Part shown: positions 25,973 through 39,162 of the stretch, piece by piece
Layout: each line of letters opens with the position of its first letter
Numbering within the stretch: the first letter of the stretch is position 1
DNA from: Camelus ferus
Lineage: Eukaryota
Direction: 5' to 3'
DNA: 64,000 nucleotides
Assembly (NCBI RefSeq): GCF_009834535.1
Contig: NC_045707.1
Span: forward strand, 19,902,001-19,966,000
Notes under the pieces: model-generated
The model's database searches: none
Told to the model about the DNA's origin: nothing
The model's input: only the letters and a program-made list of their open reading frames with translations
Made by a program: the position numbers and the translations under genes

Positions 25973-26967
25973 CTAGAGGCCTTCAGGCACCTCAAGCCCT
26001 GAGTGGGTCAGCAGCTCTCCATCCCAAAGGGCAAAGGCAGGCACCACTGGACCCCGGAAATCTGTCTGTAGTGTGTGGACCACAGCAACCCGGCTCACAT
26101 CCACCAGGCTCAGCTTCTGGGCCTCATACTCCAGCAGCAGCCCCACCTTCTCTGGCTGCCCAATGCCCTCAATAGGGGCTTTCTCTTTGGCGAACATGGT
26201 GTGCCACTTGCGCTGGGCATAGGTGAACACCCAGGAACGATCGTCAACACCAATGCAGCTATCCCGGGACATGTCCACATCTGCCACTCCTATTCGGAAT
26301 TGCTGGGAGCGCTTCACTGTCACCTCCCAGTAGTGCCTGCCACTGGTGACCGCTGTGTCTGCCAGCACCACTGCCCACTCCCGGAATCGCTCCACATTCA
26401 GGGCCAATTTTGTGGGCTCCAATCCCACCATGCCATATTTGACACCTGTGTCACCTCTGAAGAGTACCAGGCTGCTGTGAGCGGTCTTTTCTTCCAGTTT
26501 GAAACTGATGCCTGCGGGCAAAGCAAAGAGACGGGATAATGACGTGGGCTGAATCTCCGGAAATAGGGACAAATACATATCCCGATGTGAAACATTCACT
26601 CATGAGATTACAAGGAAACACGGGAAAGTGAGAATGTCAAGCCGGCGAGAGTGGGAGCGCTTCAGTATGCACAGCCCAAGGAGCCGAAAAGCTCGGACTG
26701 GGGAAGCCCTGGTATTTAAAGAAACCAGAGAGTGTCCTAGGTTTGGAATCTTAAGACCAACGCCGATGGGGGAAGGAGAATGAGTCGAAGGGGCTGGAGT
26801 TGTTTCTCCGAGCGGACTCCAGCCAGAATAACAGACGGGAACTATTTTGAAAGCAAAAGAGATTAAAAGGATCTAATCCTACCTCTGCGGGCTTCCGCGG
26901 CGGCAACTCCCAATCGTTTGGCTCCCCAGCGGCACACGCACAGCGAGCGTGCAAAGGGCAGCGCCAT
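25973..26967 (-). CDS. SPRYD4: SPRY domain-containing protein 4, 207 aa
   Basis: complement(join(25973..26511,26883..26967)) = 624 nt. Exon 1 MALPFARSLCVCRWGAKRLGVAAAEARR(G), donor GTAGGA. Exon 2 GISFKLEEKTAHSS...GRHYWEVTVKRSQQFRIGVAD...LEVPEGL*. Confidence 0.97.
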
Positions 26968-30200: not shown

Positions 30201-32538
30201 GAACAGGACCTGACCCATAGGGAGCACTGGTCTGCTGGCTTGGGGTTGTATCTGACTCCACAGGAAAGAAAGTGGAGAAGGAGGCTAGGACAGGATGGGC
30301 CAGTCTATTTACTCTGTTTCTTGGATTAGCCCATTTCTACCATGTGGGGGCCTGGATCTGATCCAAGTGCTAACTGGAGCCCTTAACTATGAGTGGGAGA
30401 GGGATGATGCACTCAGAGCTTGGTGATTGTTCTGGACTTTGCCAGGAGTCAGCAGTCAGCAAAGCATAACCAGAGAAAGGGAGAGAAGGGGGGCCCTCAG
30501 GAGCTAGCCAAAGGGGCTGCTAGGCTAGCTTGTGCTATGCTGGGGCCTTTGTCCTACTGAAACTGTCCACACAATGGAGCTGGGTTACATGCTGACCTAG
30601 CATTCTGGGTACGGGGCTGGGATAGAGGTTCCACGTGGTGAAAACAGAGATGGATGGTCACCCAGCCCCTCAGGACCATGTTGCTATTCAACCACATTGT
30701 AATTTCTATAGAGGGTGTTCAATACTTAATAATCATAAATTATGTTTATGTCTGATTAATTCATGAATCCGTTCATTTACATGTTGATTTAAGGCAGCTA
30801 ACTTAACATGTGTGTATTGCTAGGGCATATTATCTCATCTGATCCTCGTACAATCCTGTACGATCAGCAAGAGAGCTATTTTCATGGAACTCAAATCTGA
30901 GGTATTCTTTAGGTCCTAGTGCTATGGGCTGGCTAGGGAATAGCTTCAGAAAGGTAGTGAGCTGGTCCTGGACACCCTCACAAATGGCTGTACTATTTGG
31001 GACCCACTGTGGAGAAATGAAGCAAGATGAAGAGCTCTGCCTAAAGATTCCCTAAGCTTTGTAGACTCACTTGCTCCCTAGTATTATGGATTATGCTTCC
31101 TAATGGCACCTCTCTGGGACACAGAGGGGGCCTTCTCTATTGAAGGGGGTAGTAAACGTAGGATCACTAGCCCCAGGAATATAAATAGGTTGAAATGTTG
31201 ATGGTTAGTAAACCAAGAGAACACTCAAGTGTAGAGATAGATGAGACTCCAGGATGACCGCTACTACAAGCCATTAAGACTTATGATAAATTTGTAACTA
31301 CCCCAAGTTTGTTATTTTACAGATCCCTTTTCTCCATTTCCATAGTTCCTAGTGGAAAAAAAAACTTCAAAAATTTCTGTATGTTTACTTAAGGCCAGAG
31401 GAGAGAAAGGTGGAGAATCTAAAACTAAACTTTGTTGGCAACCTCTGAAAAGAACCCCCAAGTACAAGAACGGAGTCAAGTGATAGCAAAAAAAAAAAAA
31501 AAAAAAAGTGAACAAACTAGTCAGAAAAGACAAAGATGAAATGGGGTGTGTTCTGGGTGATCCCAGGAGTGCTGACCTCAGGAATCCCCTGCACTCCCAG
31601 GCAATTCCTCAAAGGCACTTTCCTTTGCCAGTTCCAGGGGTCCAGATGCCAGTTCGGCACTGGTACCTTCCCGCTGGTTGACTCAGTTTCTGGTGAGGGA
31701 TGGGAATGACCTTACCTTGCCTTCCCTGGAATTCTTCTCATTATCTTCCAGATAGATCCTCACTTTGGCTTTCCTCTTTACCTCTCTGGCTCCTGAAACC
31801 CAGGTTCATAAAAGATGATTAGGAAGTGAAAGAATGAGTCTCTCCCTTCACTGTGAGCACCTCTGGTTGACAGAAGATGTTATAAGCTCCTTCTCCTCAT
31901 TCAGCAGGCCTGGGGCCAAAGGGCTAAAGAGGGAGAGAAAAGGGACACAGCTGGAGAGAGTGGATACCTAGGTGTGAGGATGTGTGAGTACAAATGTCCA
32001 GGGCTCCCTTGAGGAGAGCACTGCCTAGGGGACGGGGTGGCAGGTTGAGGAATGAGGCTCCTCTACTGGCTGAAGGAAGGAGACGAGGGTTGTTCCCTGA
32101 CACAAGAGTGTAGCTCTCATCTCTGGCTGCCTCTTTCTCTAGGGTAGGTGCCTGAAACACTTGCTCCTCACCTCCCAACCCCACTCACCTAGACCTGATC
32201 TGGGAGATGAGAGTCCTGCAGAGAGGGACTTTTATCTATAGACTCCACCCTTCTCCCACTGAAGCCAAGCCCTTTCCCCTTCTCCACTGTTGAATCCCAG
32301 TCCAACCAAGTGAGGCCTTATTCTCTGACTGCCCCCTTATTCTGTCCCTCAGTTGTTCTTCCTTCCTTTCACTTCAGGTGCTTGGGGGTCAGCGGGTAAA
32401 GAATGAAGAGTCTGAGGCCTGGTGGGGAGAGTTTGTTAAAGGGGAGGGGAACAGAGAGAGGGTGGGGAGGAGGGAGTAGGAGAGCAGAGGAGAGGAGACA
32501 GCCTGATCTTTCCTTCCCTTCCCCACCCTCTCTCCCAG

Positions 32539-32889
32539 GACTTGAAGAGCCAGTGGTTTTGGAGACAGGTGCTGGCTGAAGGTCTGGACACCCTGAATTT
32601 TGTGGGGTTTGTCCTTAGGGCATCGTGCCTCAGTGGGAGCTCCGTGTCAGGCACAGTCCCTCACCCCCATGCCTGGAGAGCTGCTGGTGGAGAGCCTGGC
32701 ACTGGTTTTTGATGAGGTCAGTGAGGCCCAGACAAATCCGGCCCTGACTGTGGCACTATTCTCTGCCCATTGGCTTGACCCTCTCCAGGGGTAGCCTATA
32801 TCCTGGCCCAGAGCATGGCAGCCATCCTGGCCTCACTCTTCTTCTACCTGGCTCTGCCCTGGGCGGCTGCAGCCTAACTGGTCACCCAG
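32539..32889 (+). pseudogene. AQP14: AQP14-like aquaporin pseudogene, large exon (TM1-TM3 with first NPA)
   Basis: Polypyrimidine acceptor ending cccag at 32538, donor GTAGGC at 32890. Spliced across two frameshifts: DLKSQWFWRQVLAEGLDTLNFVGFVLRAS / LLVESLALVFDEVSEAQTNPALTVALFSAHWLDPLQG / VAYILAQSMAAILASLFFYLALPWAAAA*LVTQ. Collinear with MIP exon 1 in this window. Aquaporin identity is clear; the subfamily call rests on recalled AQP14 motifs and synteny. Confidence 0.85.
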
Positions 32890-33196
32890 GTAGGCAGAAG
32901 GCCCCCTCCCTGAGTAGGGTGACACTACGTAGGTAATGAGGGTGGATGACTGATATGGCATTAAGGAATGAACAAAAGAGGGGCTAGCCCTGCTCTGTGT
33001 ATCCTGTCATTATGCCACTTTCAATATGATTGAAATAGGCCAATGAGTTAGGCTCAGCAACTCAGGAATTTGGGTGACTCGTTGCAGATCCTTTGCTCAA
33101 ATCTTCCTTGGTAGCTAGATGATGGGGTCTGTGGGCCAACGGGAGGGATGCATGTGTTCTCTCACCCCTTGTCCTAGCATCACTTGTCCCTTCTAG

Positions 33197-33348
33197 GCGA
33201 GCAGGAAGAGTTATGTAGGTCAGGGCCTGGGCATGGAGTTTTTCTCCACTTTCTAGTTGGTACTCACCATGTTTGCTGGGCTTCGCTGGCGGGTGGACCA
33301 GGTGGCCTGGCAGTGGGTTTCTCAGTGACCTGAAGCACTGGTATGAAT
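33197..33348 (+). pseudogene. AQP14: AQP14-like pseudogene, next exon (TM4 to start of TM5)
   Basis: Acceptor cacttgtcccttctag. ASRKSYVGQGLGMEFFSTF*LVLTMFA, then after a ~13-nt deletion GPGGLAVGFSVT*. Aligns with MIP exon 2 ([21 protein letters not shown]...LAVGFSLT). TAG at 33254-33256 sits at the conserved Gln position. Confidence 0.8.
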
Positions 33349-33496
33349 NNNNNNNNNNNNNNNNNNNNNNNNNNNNNNNNNNNNNNNNNNNNNNNNNNNN
33401 NNNNNNNNNNNNNNNNNNNNNNNNNNNNNNNNNNNNNNNNNNNNNNNNNNNNNNNNNNNNNNNNNNNNNNNNNNNNNNNNNNNNNNNNNNNNNNNN
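33349..33496. other. N-run (148 nt)
   Basis: Seen directly; lies between the pseudo-exon and an L1 3' fragment. Confidence 0.99.
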
Positions 33497-34161
33497 AGAC
33501 TCTAATTCAAAAAGACATGTGCACCCCAATGTTCATAGCAGCATGACTTACAACAGTCAAGACATGGAAACAACCTAAATGTTCGTTGACAGATGACTGG
33601 ATAAAGAAGATGTGAGATACACACACACAGACATACACACACACAATGAAATACTACTCAACCATAAAAAAGAATGAAATAATGCCATTTGCAGCAACGT
33701 GGATGGACTTAGAGTTTATCATACTAAGTGAAGGAAGTCAGACAGAGAAAGACAAATATCATGATATCACATATGTGGAATCTAAAAAAATTACACAACT
33801 GAACTTATTTACAAAACAGAAAGAGACTAACAGACATAGAAAACAAACTTATGGTTACCAAAAGTGAAGGAGGGGAGGGATAAATTTGGAGTTTGGGATT
33901 AGATACAAACTACCATATATTAAATAGATAACCAGCAAGGGCCTACTGTACAGCACAGGGAACTATATTCAATATCTTGTAATATGTCTAATGGAAAAGA
34001 ATCTGAAAAAGAATAAATTTATATATATATAAAAAACTGAATCATTTTGCTGTACACCTGACATTAACACAACATTTTAAATCAACTATACTTCAATTGA
34101 AAAAGAAGAAAGAGTTGAAAAAAATAAGCAAAAAAAAAAAAAAGAAAGAAAGAAAGAAAGA
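33497..34161 (+). mobile_element. 5'-truncated L1 3' end with poly(A)/(AAAG)n tail
   Basis: gacatgtgcaccccaatgttcatagcagc...aagaatgaaataatgccatttgcagcaacgtggatggacttagag...aatcaactatacttcaatt, then A-run and (aaag)n. Confidence 0.92.
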
Positions 34162-34929
34162 ACGCACCCGTACAAAGCAGCAGGCTTGGGGAAGGCTGGA
34201 TTCCACTCCTCAAGGGGAAACACAGCTTTTTTTTTTCCTTTCAAGAGTCTAGGCTATCAGAAAATATTGTGTATGCTAATTATATGTAAATATATGTAAA
34301 ATCTCAGGTTTTGAGAGCTCACCTCTAATTTGAAAGTTTGGTGTTTACCTAAGTGGGGAGGCTGCTGTGAAAGAAAATGGGCTGGGGTTCGGTTCTCCAT
34401 AAGGTTCTTATCAACATTTGATAAGGAGTAAAGGGGAAAGGTTGGTAGCTTCAAATAAGGAAATCTGTTCATTGGTGTCTCCGAGGGCACGACATTAGCT
34501 GCTCTTTGCTCCTTATTCTAAGAGGCCATGGGGTCTATGGTTAGGGAAAATCCCTTCCGATTGACACAGCCCTCATCAAATGGCTCCTATTTGTTAAGTG
34601 CTTTATTCTGTGCCAGGCACCATACTAGCCCTGTACCTACTTTTTCTTTGATCCAGAGTAAACTGAGGCTCAGAGAGCTTACATTAATTTATTCAACAAA
34701 TACTCATTTACTGCCCACTGTGTGTCAAGCACAGGGTTTGCAGTGGTGGACAAATCGACAAATCCCTGCCCTCCTGGAGTTTATATCTAGTGGGGATAAT
34801 GTCCCCGCCTAGAAGATGGGAAAGCCAGGGCTGGGTTGCTGCTGTTCGTTATGGATTTCAAGTGCAGAGAATATTCCTTTGTTCATGACATCCCCCTCTC
34901 ATTGGCCTATATATGGCTCCAACTAATTT

Positions 34930-35490
34930 TTTTTAAATAATTAAGCGTCATTATTAACCATCTACCCAACAGAAAAACTAGAACCTTGAGAAGCACTTAC
35001 AGAAATCTGTACTTATGTATGTAAATATCCCGCTTCATCCCCTCGTCTCCCCTAACCTAAGGTAAACACCATCCTGAGTCCTGTGTTTATCATTCTTTGT
35101 TTTCTTTTTTGTGTAGTTGCATGTCATATATATGTGTTTTGAAAAGCATATTTTTATTTTAGATGTTTTTTTTTTTTACTTTATGAAAAGATTTTCATGC
35201 TATGTATAATCTTCTGGGGCTTTTTAAATGACATTTTATTGCTAAAATTTATCCCTACTATTGAGTGTCACTGTGGTGGTACCTCGTTTTGACTGCTGAA
35301 TAATTTTCTGTTGTGTGAATATACCATCGTTTATTCATCCATTCTCCTGTCGATGGGCATTTGGGTTGCTTCAAGATTTTGCTATTGTGAACAATGCTGC
35401 TGTAAACAATCTTGTAACTGTCTCCTGGTGTAAGTATAGGAAAGTTTCCCTTGGGTATGTATGTAAGTGAGAAGTGAAATTCCTGGGTCA
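34930..35490 (-). mobile_element. Antisense L1ME-type fragment
   Basis: ttattcatccattctcctgtcgatgggcatttgggttgcttcaagattttgctattgtgaacaatgctgc. Confidence 0.7.
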
Positions 35491-35899
35491 GACACCCCCA
35501 CCTCCAGACCTTTCCCTAGGGATAGAGGTTTAGGACTCCAGTGTCCTGATAATGGCCATATCAGGAGGCATCAGACCCTCCCATTGCTTCATAGCCATGA
35601 CTCAGTTTCCATCCTTTCAGTATTTTTGCTAGCACCTTGTGAGTTAGGAAAGACGAAGTACAAGCTGATTCTGAGATTTAACTACTAACCCCTCTTCCCC
35701 TGCCCAGCTCCCTGACCCCACTTCCAGGCTATCCATGGAAGACACTTTTTCCTGCTCTGTCTTTGTGGTTTAAAAGGCCAGGCTGAGGGCTTGGAAAGGG
35801 AGGTGCTGGCATGGGGTAGGGGTAGGGAACCCAGGCTCAGAGAAAGCCAGACGCAGCAGATCTATTCTGTCCCAGAGCTGCAGGGTCCACAGATTCCAG

Positions 35900-39162
<3,263 letters not shown>

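What the first reader, a model, noticed from the sequence alone, without database searches (positions are those of the whole stretch)
32509..32895. Unannotated aquaporin fossil upstream of MIP: AQP14-type exon with first NPA motif
Seen: a 351-nt AG...GT-bounded exon that translates, across two frameshifts, into an aquaporin N-terminal half collinear with MIP exon 1 (DLKSQWFWRQVLAE vs [14 protein letters not shown]; EVSEAQTNPALTVAL vs [15 protein letters not shown]; AYILAQSMAAIL vs [12 protein letters not shown]). Lesions: a frameshift at ~32612-32656, a 1-nt deletion at ~32790 and TAA at 32875-32877. Knowledge (recalled): Aqp14 sits in tandem with Aqp0 in fishes, sauropsids and monotremes, has Gln in place of His before NPA1 (SGAQxNPA), and was reported as pseudogenised in therian mammals. 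Inference: this is the camelid AQP14 relic. The ORF track shows only a 64-aa piece.
Basis: partly seen in the sequence, partly recalled or inferred. Interest (0 to 1): 0.85.

Follow-up and report, generated by a model that had tools for sequence, protein, structure and literature searches.

The report
Dead AQP14 water-channel gene beside MIP
Just upstream of the lens aquaporin gene MIP lie two decayed exons of aquaporin-14, a water-channel gene that placental mammals are already known to have lost, so this is a well-supported but ordinary gene fossil.

Summary
Window 32539-32889 (+) is a 351-nt exon that keeps its AG and GT splice sites. Read across two frameshifts and one TAA, it gives the N-terminal half of an aquaporin.

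It is AQP14, not a MIP/AQP0/2/5/6 copy:
- The corrected peptide is 63% identical to marsupial AQP14 and about 28% identical to AQP0.
- In a tree it nests inside the AQP14 clade (100/100), sister to marsupial AQP14.
- It carries the AQP14 signature residues: Gln before NPA1 and Gly at the first pore-filter position.
- It lies 3.9 kb upstream of MIP on the same strand, as intact AQP14 does in echidna, tortoise and sugar glider.

A second relic exon (exon 3) lies at 33197-33346. Exons 4-5 are missing through a deletion of about 0.83 kb at about 35492.

Several lesions are shared with whale, horse, cat and bat relics, so these are not assembly errors. dN/dS among the relics is 0.6-0.8, against about 0.2 between working orthologues.

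- The first frameshift is an 11-nt deletion at 32668/32669.
- Marsupials keep the gene; only eutherians lost it.

Eutherian AQP14 fragments, including cetartiodactyl ones, were published in 2014 and 2019. This is a new member of a known kind, of low to moderate interest. The scan's own note s1-149309 had already flagged exon 3.

The parts
32539..32889 (+). AQP14 pseudo-exon 2 (351 nt). It encodes TM1, TM2, loop B with NPA1 (32735-32743) and TM3. The acceptor AG (32537-32538) and donor GT (32890-32891) are intact.
   Evidence: It is 63% identical (75/119) to sugar-glider AQP14 across the frameshifts.
32668..32669 (+). Junction of an 11-nt deletion, which is the first frameshift. Whale, horse, cat and bat have an 11-13-nt deletion at the same site. 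Rabbit, marsupial, monotreme and tortoise do not.
   Evidence: DNA alignments.
32786..32794 (+). 1-nt deletion in a G-rich run, which is the second frameshift and restores frame 1. Whale and horse share it; cat and bat do not.
32875..32877 (+). In-frame TAA. The whale has TAG at the same codon. Horse, cat, marsupial and monotreme have CAG.
33197..33346 (+). AQP14 pseudo-exon 3 (TM4 region). The acceptor AG at 33195-33196 is kept. Lesions: TAG at 33254-33256, a 16-nt deletion after 33292 with the same boundaries as in the whale, a 2-nt deletion at 33329|33330, and the donor GT changed to AT at 33347-33348 (also in whale and horse).
   Evidence: It is 61-65% identical to monotreme and marsupial AQP14 over the first 26 codons.
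33347..34194 (.). Insertion specific to the window's lineage, directly after exon 3. It holds the N run 33349-33496, an ORF resembling a LINE-1 ORF2 tail at 33646-33867, and an A-rich tail at about 34128-34165. It is absent from the horse, cat, bat and whale loci.
   Evidence: blastn block breaks; sequence. The LINE-1 identity is my recall and was not tested; Pfam found nothing.
35489..35495 (.). Junction of a deletion of about 0.83 kb that removed AQP14 exons 4 (NPA2) and 5. The matching stretch is present in horse L007 8183-9019, bat L011 8189-9016, cat L009 19599-20641 and sloth L004 8198-9009.
   Evidence: No exon 4 or 5 match was found anywhere in 33300-36460, even at E = 50.
36460..36819 (+). 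Exon 1 of the intact neighbour MIP/AQP0 (Pfam MIP, E = 1.9e-41). Further MIP exons lie at about 37321-37464, 37898-37975 and from 38977 on.

Best explanation
This is the decayed remainder of the ancestral vertebrate aquaporin-14 gene. It is unprocessed and sits at its original position, directly upstream of MIP/AQP0 on the same strand. Only exons 2 and 3 survive. Both are broken by frameshifting deletions, two stop codons and a lost splice donor. The exons for the second half of the pore (NPA2) and the C-terminus have been deleted. It cannot encode a water channel and has been drifting close to neutrally. Part of the damage arose before the window's lineage split from whales, and one deletion arose before the split of bats, carnivores, horses and cetartiodactyls. 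What is shown: homology, orthology, synteny, the lesions and which species share them. What is inferred: that it has no function.
For: - Best matches: all three reading-frame pieces match the aquaporin gene upstream of MIP in echidna and tortoise at 54-61% identity and in order. They match MIP itself at only 37-45%.
- Identity of the reference genes: those upstream genes and their relatives are named aquaporin 14 by their sources.
- Peptide identity: the frame-corrected exon-2 peptide is 63% identical to Petaurus AQP14. blastp gives E = 3e-34 against AQP14 and about 1e-5 at 28% identity against AQP0.
- Alignment scores: frameshift-tolerant scores are 166-264 with AQP14 guides and 75-95 with AQP0/1/2/4/5/6 guides. 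Shuffles give 36 +/- 6.
- Trees: the AQP14 clade has support 100/100. The eutherian relics form a clade (100/98) that is sister to marsupial AQP14 (100/98). The window pairs with the whale (96/89).
- Signature residues: Gln before xNPA1 occurs in 28/30 AQP14 rows and 5/105 other rows. A, G or V at the first ar/R pore-filter position occurs in 27/30 AQP14 rows, while 74/105 other rows have Phe. The window has Gln and Gly.
- Synteny: intact AQP14 lies 1-3.6 kb upstream of MIP on the same strand in echidna, tortoise and sugar glider.
- Lesions shared with independent assemblies.
- Exons 4-5 are absent.
- dN/dS is 0.6-0.8 among relics and 0.18-0.35 among working orthologues.
- The exons are no better conserved than the flanks or the intron.
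- Literature: AQP14 lies upstream of aqp0 in vertebrates and is fragmented into pseudogenes in eutherians (PMC6906440; PMC4245216).
Against: - Pfam's MIP model did not hit the raw, uncorrected ORF pieces. They are short and partly out of frame.
- dN/dS of 0.6-0.8 is below 1, so some past constraint cannot be excluded. The simple counting method also tends to bias this ratio downward.
- Both splice sites of exon 2 and the NPA1 codons are still intact.
- Only this window was searched, so a second AQP14 copy elsewhere in the genome is not excluded.
Confidence: 0.95

Rival explanations
1. The relic is still a dead AQP14 gene, but it has been reused as non-coding sequence. It might be part of an upstream MIP or SPRYD4-side transcript, or a lens enhancer. 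That would explain why it has survived for tens of millions of years in many orders.
For: - Exons 2 and 3 are still alignable in whale, horse, cat, bat and rabbit.
- In felids the called MIP gene range starts 11.6 kb upstream of the MIP ATG, next to SPRYD4, and spans the relic.
- Both splice sites of exon 2 are intact in the window.
Against: - The exons are no more conserved than the adjacent intron and upstream DNA: exon 2 is 76-84% identical and intron 2 is 83-84%.
- Different lineages have deleted different parts: deer lost exons 2-3, the window lost exons 4-5, and no relic was found in the tenrec.
- The splice sites are lost in whale, cat and one horse assembly.
Confidence: 0.05
2. AQP14 is still a working gene in this animal, and the apparent lesions are sequencing or assembly errors.
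For: - The AG and GT of exon 2 and the NPA1 motif are intact.
- The exon length is a multiple of three.
- An N run starts 2 nt after exon 3.
Against: - The 11-13-nt deletion, the stop-creating C-to-T change, the 16-nt deletion and the GT-to-AT donor change recur in independent assemblies of other species.
- There are two in-frame stops.
- Exons 4-5 are absent, and the DNA on both sides of the deletion junction aligns continuously to the other species.
- dN/dS shows relaxed constraint.
Confidence: 0.01
3. The exon is a decayed tandem copy of MIP exon 1, or of another AQP0/2/5/6-type gene, and not AQP14.
For: It lies next to MIP and runs in the same order as MIP exon 1.
Against: - It is only 28-45% identical to AQP0, against 47-63% to mammalian and turtle AQP14.
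- It falls on the opposite side of a 100/100 split from AQP0/1/2/4/5/6.
- Its signature residues are those of AQP14.
- The same relic lies at the same place in other orders, and intact AQP14 lies there in non-eutherians.
Confidence: 0.005

Closest known systems
Eutherian AQP14 pseudogene fragments (Finn et al. 2014, PMC4245216; Chauvigne et al. 2019, PMC6906440)
   Same: The same gene, the same position upstream of AQP0, and the same state: isolated exon fragments with stops. Cetartiodactyla (ruminants, cetaceans), bats, carnivores and a sloth are listed in their accession table.
   Different: - That table lists camelids for AQP0 and AQP1 but not for AQP14. It also has no horse, felid or rabbit AQP14 entry.
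- The only eutherian fragment the paper's text describes is a C-terminal dolphin one. Here the N-terminal exons 2-3 survive and the C-terminal exons are gone.
Intact marsupial AQP14 (Petaurus breviceps P0160, labelled 'aquaporin-2-like'; Vombatus ursinus P0278, labelled 'aquaporin-4-like')
   Same: - It is the closest protein: 63% identity over exon 2.
- Exon 2 and 3 boundaries and phase are the same.
- It has the same SGAQTNPA motif.
- The gene lies about 1 kb upstream of MIP.
   Different: The marsupial gene has an open reading frame through exons 2-5. The window copy has frameshifts and stops and lacks exons 4-5.
MIP / AQP0, the neighbouring intact gene at 36460 onward
   Same: Same superfamily (Pfam PF00230), same strand, and equivalent exon content (the first hemipore).
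   Different: It is a different subfamily: His rather than Gln before NPA1, Phe rather than Gly at the first pore-filter position, and about 28-45% identity. It falls in a separate clade.
AQP4, reported in the literature as the classical aquaporin subfamily nearest to AQP14
   Same: Classical aquaporin grade. Many databases label AQP14 proteins 'aquaporin-4-like'.
   Different: AQP4 representatives fall outside the AQP14 clade. The alignment score with an AQP4 guide is 94, against 264 for AQP14.

Membership tests
AQP14 subfamily (by descent) | Falls inside the AQP14 clade in a tree that also holds AQP0, 1, 2, 4, 5 and 6 | tested here: met
   The AQP14 clade has support 100/100, and the relic sits within it as sister to marsupial AQP14 (100/98).
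AQP14 subfamily (by descent) | Lies directly upstream of AQP0/MIP in the same orientation | tested here: met
   The relic is at 32539-33346 (+) and the MIP ATG at 36460 (+). Intact AQP14 has the same arrangement in echidna, tortoise and sugar glider. PMC6906440 states the same rule.
AQP14 subfamily (by descent) | Signature residues: Gln in place of His before xNPA1, and a non-aromatic residue at the ar/R pore-filter position on TM2 | tested here: met
   The window has Gln and Gly. Gln occurs in 28/30 AQP14 rows and 5/105 others. A, G or V occurs in 27/30 AQP14 rows, while 74/105 others have Phe. Table 1 of PMC4245216 lists Gly at this position for Metatheria.
AQP14 subfamily (by descent) | Conserved exon boundaries of the five-exon sarcopterygian gene | tested here: met
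   The exon 2 and 3 acceptor and donor positions align with those of sugar glider, echidna and tortoise. Exon 1, which encodes only 3-7 codons, was not located.
AQP14 subfamily (as a working channel) | Open reading frame with both hemipores (NPA1 and NPA2/NPAR) and the C-terminal regulatory sites | tested here: not met
   There are two stops, four frameshifting deletions and a lost donor. Exons 4-5 are absent. It is therefore a pseudogene, not a functional member.
MIP superfamily (Pfam PF00230) | A match to the Pfam MIP profile | tested here: inconclusive
   The raw ORF pieces gave no hit at E <= 10. They are short and include out-of-frame residues. Its blastp matches (E = 3e-34) are all PF00230 proteins.
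   separates them by a 100/100 split. Alignment scores are 75-95, against 166-264 for AQP14.
Unitary (unprocessed) pseudogene | Ancestral position and introns are kept, the lesions are disabling, and the genome has no working copy | tested here: inconclusive
   Position, the intron between exons 2 and 3, and the lesions are all shown. Absence of another copy cannot be tested from a single window. The literature reports none in eutherians (PMC6906440).

The most novel reading that the evidence does not exclude
AQP14 may not have died once in the eutherian stem. It may have been lost several times independently after the placental orders began to diverge.
- I found no disabling lesion shared by all the relics examined.
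- The rabbit lacks the 11-13-nt exon-2 deletion common to whale, horse, cat, bat and the window.
- Horse exon 5 is still an open 54-codon frame.
- Each lineage has deleted different exons.
- dN/dS among the relics is 0.6-0.8 rather than 1.
Probability: 0.15. Interest if true: 0.45.

Novelty: new member of a known kind. Interest (0 to 1): 0.27.

Why it matters
The finding adds a clean, well-anchored example to the record of aquaporin-14 loss in placental mammals. The lineage is a cetartiodactyl outside ruminants and whales, probably a camelid, and the published accession table has no AQP14 entry for camelids.

It shows that the N-terminal exons can outlast the C-terminal ones. Together with the horse, cat, bat, whale, rabbit, sloth and deer loci fetched here, it gives a set of shared and private lesions. 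These date part of the decay to before the camelid-whale split and one deletion to the early history of Laurasiatheria.

In practice it is an annotation point. The two exons should be marked as an AQP14 pseudogene, so that gene finders do not report them as a novel aquaporin. It does not change what is known about aquaporin biology.

Tried and rejected
- Pfam on the raw ORF pieces gave no hit. I did not treat this as evidence against homology, because the pieces are short and partly out of frame.
- The first DNA tree of the MIP region put the window outside all other laurasiatherians, and an AU test rejected a cetartiodactyl grouping. Site counts by block pointed to poorly filled alignment columns in the 3' part as the cause. 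With complete columns only, the window is sister to deer+whale at 98/98. I rejected the first tree as an artefact.
- The search for exons 4 and 5 in 33300-36460, by tblastn at E up to 50 and by blastn with the sloth and deer relic DNA, found nothing.
- The tenrec locus had no AQP14 remnant within 10 kb upstream of MIP.
- The look-up of the MIP protein P0005 was withheld by the tool.
- I did not search for exon 1. It encodes only 3-7 variable codons and cannot be recognised by similarity.
- I did not fill in or look up the N run at 33349-33496. By alignment, exon 3 ends 2 nt before it.
- The 11-13-nt deletion cannot serve as proof of an ancestral frameshift. Its size differs between lineages (11, 12 or 13 nt), so the original deletion may have been in frame.

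Full report
**What is in the sequence.**
Frame 1 gives DLKSQWFWRQVLAEGLDTLNFVGFVLRASCLSGSSVSGTVPHP. Frame 2 gives MPGELLVESLALVFDEVSEAQTNPALTVALFSAHWLDPLQG. Frame 1 again gives AYILAQSMAAILASLFFYLALPWAAAA*LVTQ.
- The stretch is bounded by CAG|G at 32536-32539 and CAG|GT at 32887-32891, so the exon is 32539-32889, 351 nt.
- MIP/AQP0 exon 1 starts at 36460 on the same strand (Pfam MIP, E = 1.9e-41). Its NPA2 exon is near 37916.

**Reference genes.**
- I searched with the open frame around MIP exon 1 and obtained MIP orthologues from many vertebrates. I then fetched their genomic surroundings.
- In echidna, Galapagos tortoise and sugar glider a second MIP-family gene lies 1-3.6 kb upstream of MIP on the same strand.
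- A search with the tortoise exon returned proteins that their sources name 'Aquaporin 14'. These include the platypus, painted turtle, shark and teleost entries.

**Is it AQP14?**
- The three window pieces match that upstream gene in order at 54-61% identity. They match MIP itself at 37-45%.
- A frameshift-tolerant alignment to sugar-glider AQP14 gives 75/119 identities (63%) over the whole exon.
- The corrected peptide, with X at each break, finds only AQP14 proteins at the top of a blastp search of all proteins collected. The best are sugar glider (E = 3e-34) and wombat, then turtles, squamates, monotremes and fishes. AQP0 appears at about 28% identity and E about 1e-5.
- Alignment scores are 166-264 with AQP14 guides and 75-95 with AQP0, 1, 2, 4, 5 and 6 guides. 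Shuffled exons score 36 +/- 6.
- For a tree I added representatives from an exhaustive profile search. Their names were checked (AQP1, AQP2, AQP4, AQP5, AQP6, wombat AQP14).
- Both a 136-row quick tree and a 58-row careful tree put the window peptide inside AQP14 (100/100). It sits in a clade of eutherian relics (100/98) that is sister to marsupial AQP14 (100/98). Monotremes come next, so the tree follows the species tree.
- The window keeps two AQP14 signatures. One is Gln before xNPA1 (28/30 AQP14 rows, 5/105 others). The other is a small residue at the first ar/R pore-filter position, where most other aquaporins have Phe. PMC4245216 describes the same non-aromatic filter.

**The rest of the gene.**
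- tblastn of AQP14 proteins against the window found a second relic, exon 3, at 33197-33346. The scan's note s1-149309 had flagged the same stretch.
- Nothing resembling exon 4 (NPA2) or exon 5 is present.
- Comparison with horse, bat, cat and sloth shows that the roughly 0.83 kb holding those exons is missing at window position about 35492.
- About 850 bp directly after exon 3 (33347-34194) is absent from the other species. It contains the N run and an A-rich tail. It looks like a retroposon insertion, but that identification is from my recall only.

**Relics in other mammals and shared lesions.**
- I fetched the MIP upstream region from deer, sloth, tenrec, pygmy sperm whale, two equids, two felids, a horseshoe bat and rabbit.
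- The relic is widespread:

| Species | What survives |
|---|---|
| Horse | Exons 2-5 |
| Cat, bat | Exons 2, 3 and 5 |
| Whale | Exons 2 and 3 and a scrap of exon 5 |
| Sloth | Exons 4-5 |
| Deer | Only a scrap of exon 5; exons 2-3 deleted |
| Rabbit | A core of exon 2 and a scrap of exon 5 |
| Tenrec | Nothing found |

- The DNA alignments show the following for the window's lesions:

| Lesion in the window | Where else it is seen |
|---|---|
| 11-nt deletion at 32668/9 | Whale, horse, cat and bat have an 11-13-nt deletion at the same site. Rabbit and the non-eutherians have none. |
| 1-nt deletion near 32792 | Whale and horse |
| TAA at 32875 | Whale has TAG; all others have CAG |
| 16-nt deletion in exon 3 | Whale, with identical boundaries |
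| Exon 3 donor GT changed to AT | Whale and horse |
| TAG at 33254 | Private to the window |
| 2-nt deletion at 33329/30 | Private to the window |
| Gly to Glu in SGAQ | Private to the window |

- Because the shared lesions occur in independent assemblies, they are not sequencing errors.
- They place part of the decay before the split of the window's lineage from whales. They place one deletion before the split of cetartiodactyls, perissodactyls, carnivores and bats.

**Constraint.**
- Pairwise dN/dS over the codons of exons 2-3 is 0.6-0.8 among the relics and 0.18-0.35 between marsupial, monotreme and tortoise genes.
- Exon identity to whale, horse and cat (75-84%) is no higher than that of the intron between the exons or the upstream DNA.
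- This fits near-neutral drift.

**Which animal?**
- On well-aligned, complete columns of the MIP region, the window is sister to deer+whale (98/98).
- That is the position expected of a camelid. It also fits a pig. An earlier contrary tree was an alignment artefact.

**What is already known.**
- PMC6906440 states that aqp14 lies upstream of aqp0 in vertebrates. [quoted passage not shown]
- PMC4245216 reports eutherian exon fragments in Xenarthra, Cetartiodactyla, Chiroptera and Carnivora.
- Its accession table lists bats, bovids, cetaceans, ferret, seal and sloth for AQP14. It has no AQP14 entry for camelid, horse, felid or rabbit, although camelids are listed for other aquaporins.

**Verdict.**
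- The object is a new lineage-level example of a published phenomenon.

Noticed in passing
L007 5860-8911 and L008 5857-8911 (Equus loci): The horse and donkey relic is the most complete one seen. Exons 2, 3, 4 and 5 are all recognisable, and exon 5 is an uninterrupted 54-codon frame. Perissodactyla are not in the published list of eutherian AQP14 fragments.
   Followed up: partly
L013 6346-6550 and 8874-9029 (rabbit): The rabbit (Euarchontoglires) keeps a core of AQP14 exon 2, flanked by what look like repeat insertions, and a scrap of exon 5 with a stop. It lacks the 11-13-nt exon-2 deletion seen in the laurasiatherians examined.
   Followed up: partly
L009 10001-26037 and L010 10001-25250 (felids): The called MIP gene range starts about 11.6 kb upstream of the MIP start codon, only about 170 bp from SPRYD4 on the other strand. 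It spans the AQP14 relic. This hints at upstream transcript variants that may start at a shared promoter.
   Followed up: no
L003 8171-8181 (red deer), equivalent to window 31876-34666: The deer has deleted the whole stretch holding AQP14 exons 2-3 and keeps only a C-terminal scrap at L003 8436-8543. Deer and whale also both lack the equivalent of window 34920-35489.
   Followed up: partly
window 33347-34194: This is a lineage-specific insertion directly after pseudo-exon 3. It contains the N run 33349-33496, an ORF (33646-33867) whose peptide resembles the C-terminal end of LINE-1 ORF2 (my recall; no Pfam hit), and an A-rich tail near 34128-34165.
   Followed up: partly
window 25973-26599 (-): A 208-codon ORF with PRY and SPRY domains (Pfam SPRY, E = 3.4e-12). 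It is presumably the main exon of SPRYD4, the gene on the far side of the AQP14 relic, as in the whale, horse and cat loci.
   Followed up: partly
window 36912-36931: A (TG)10 microsatellite in MIP intron 1.
   Followed up: no
databases: Intact AQP14 proteins carry many conflicting automatic names, including aquaporin-4-like, aquaporin-2-like, AQPAe.a-like, lens fiber MIP-like and even 'alcohol dehydrogenase'. Name-based screens would therefore miss the family.
   Followed up: no
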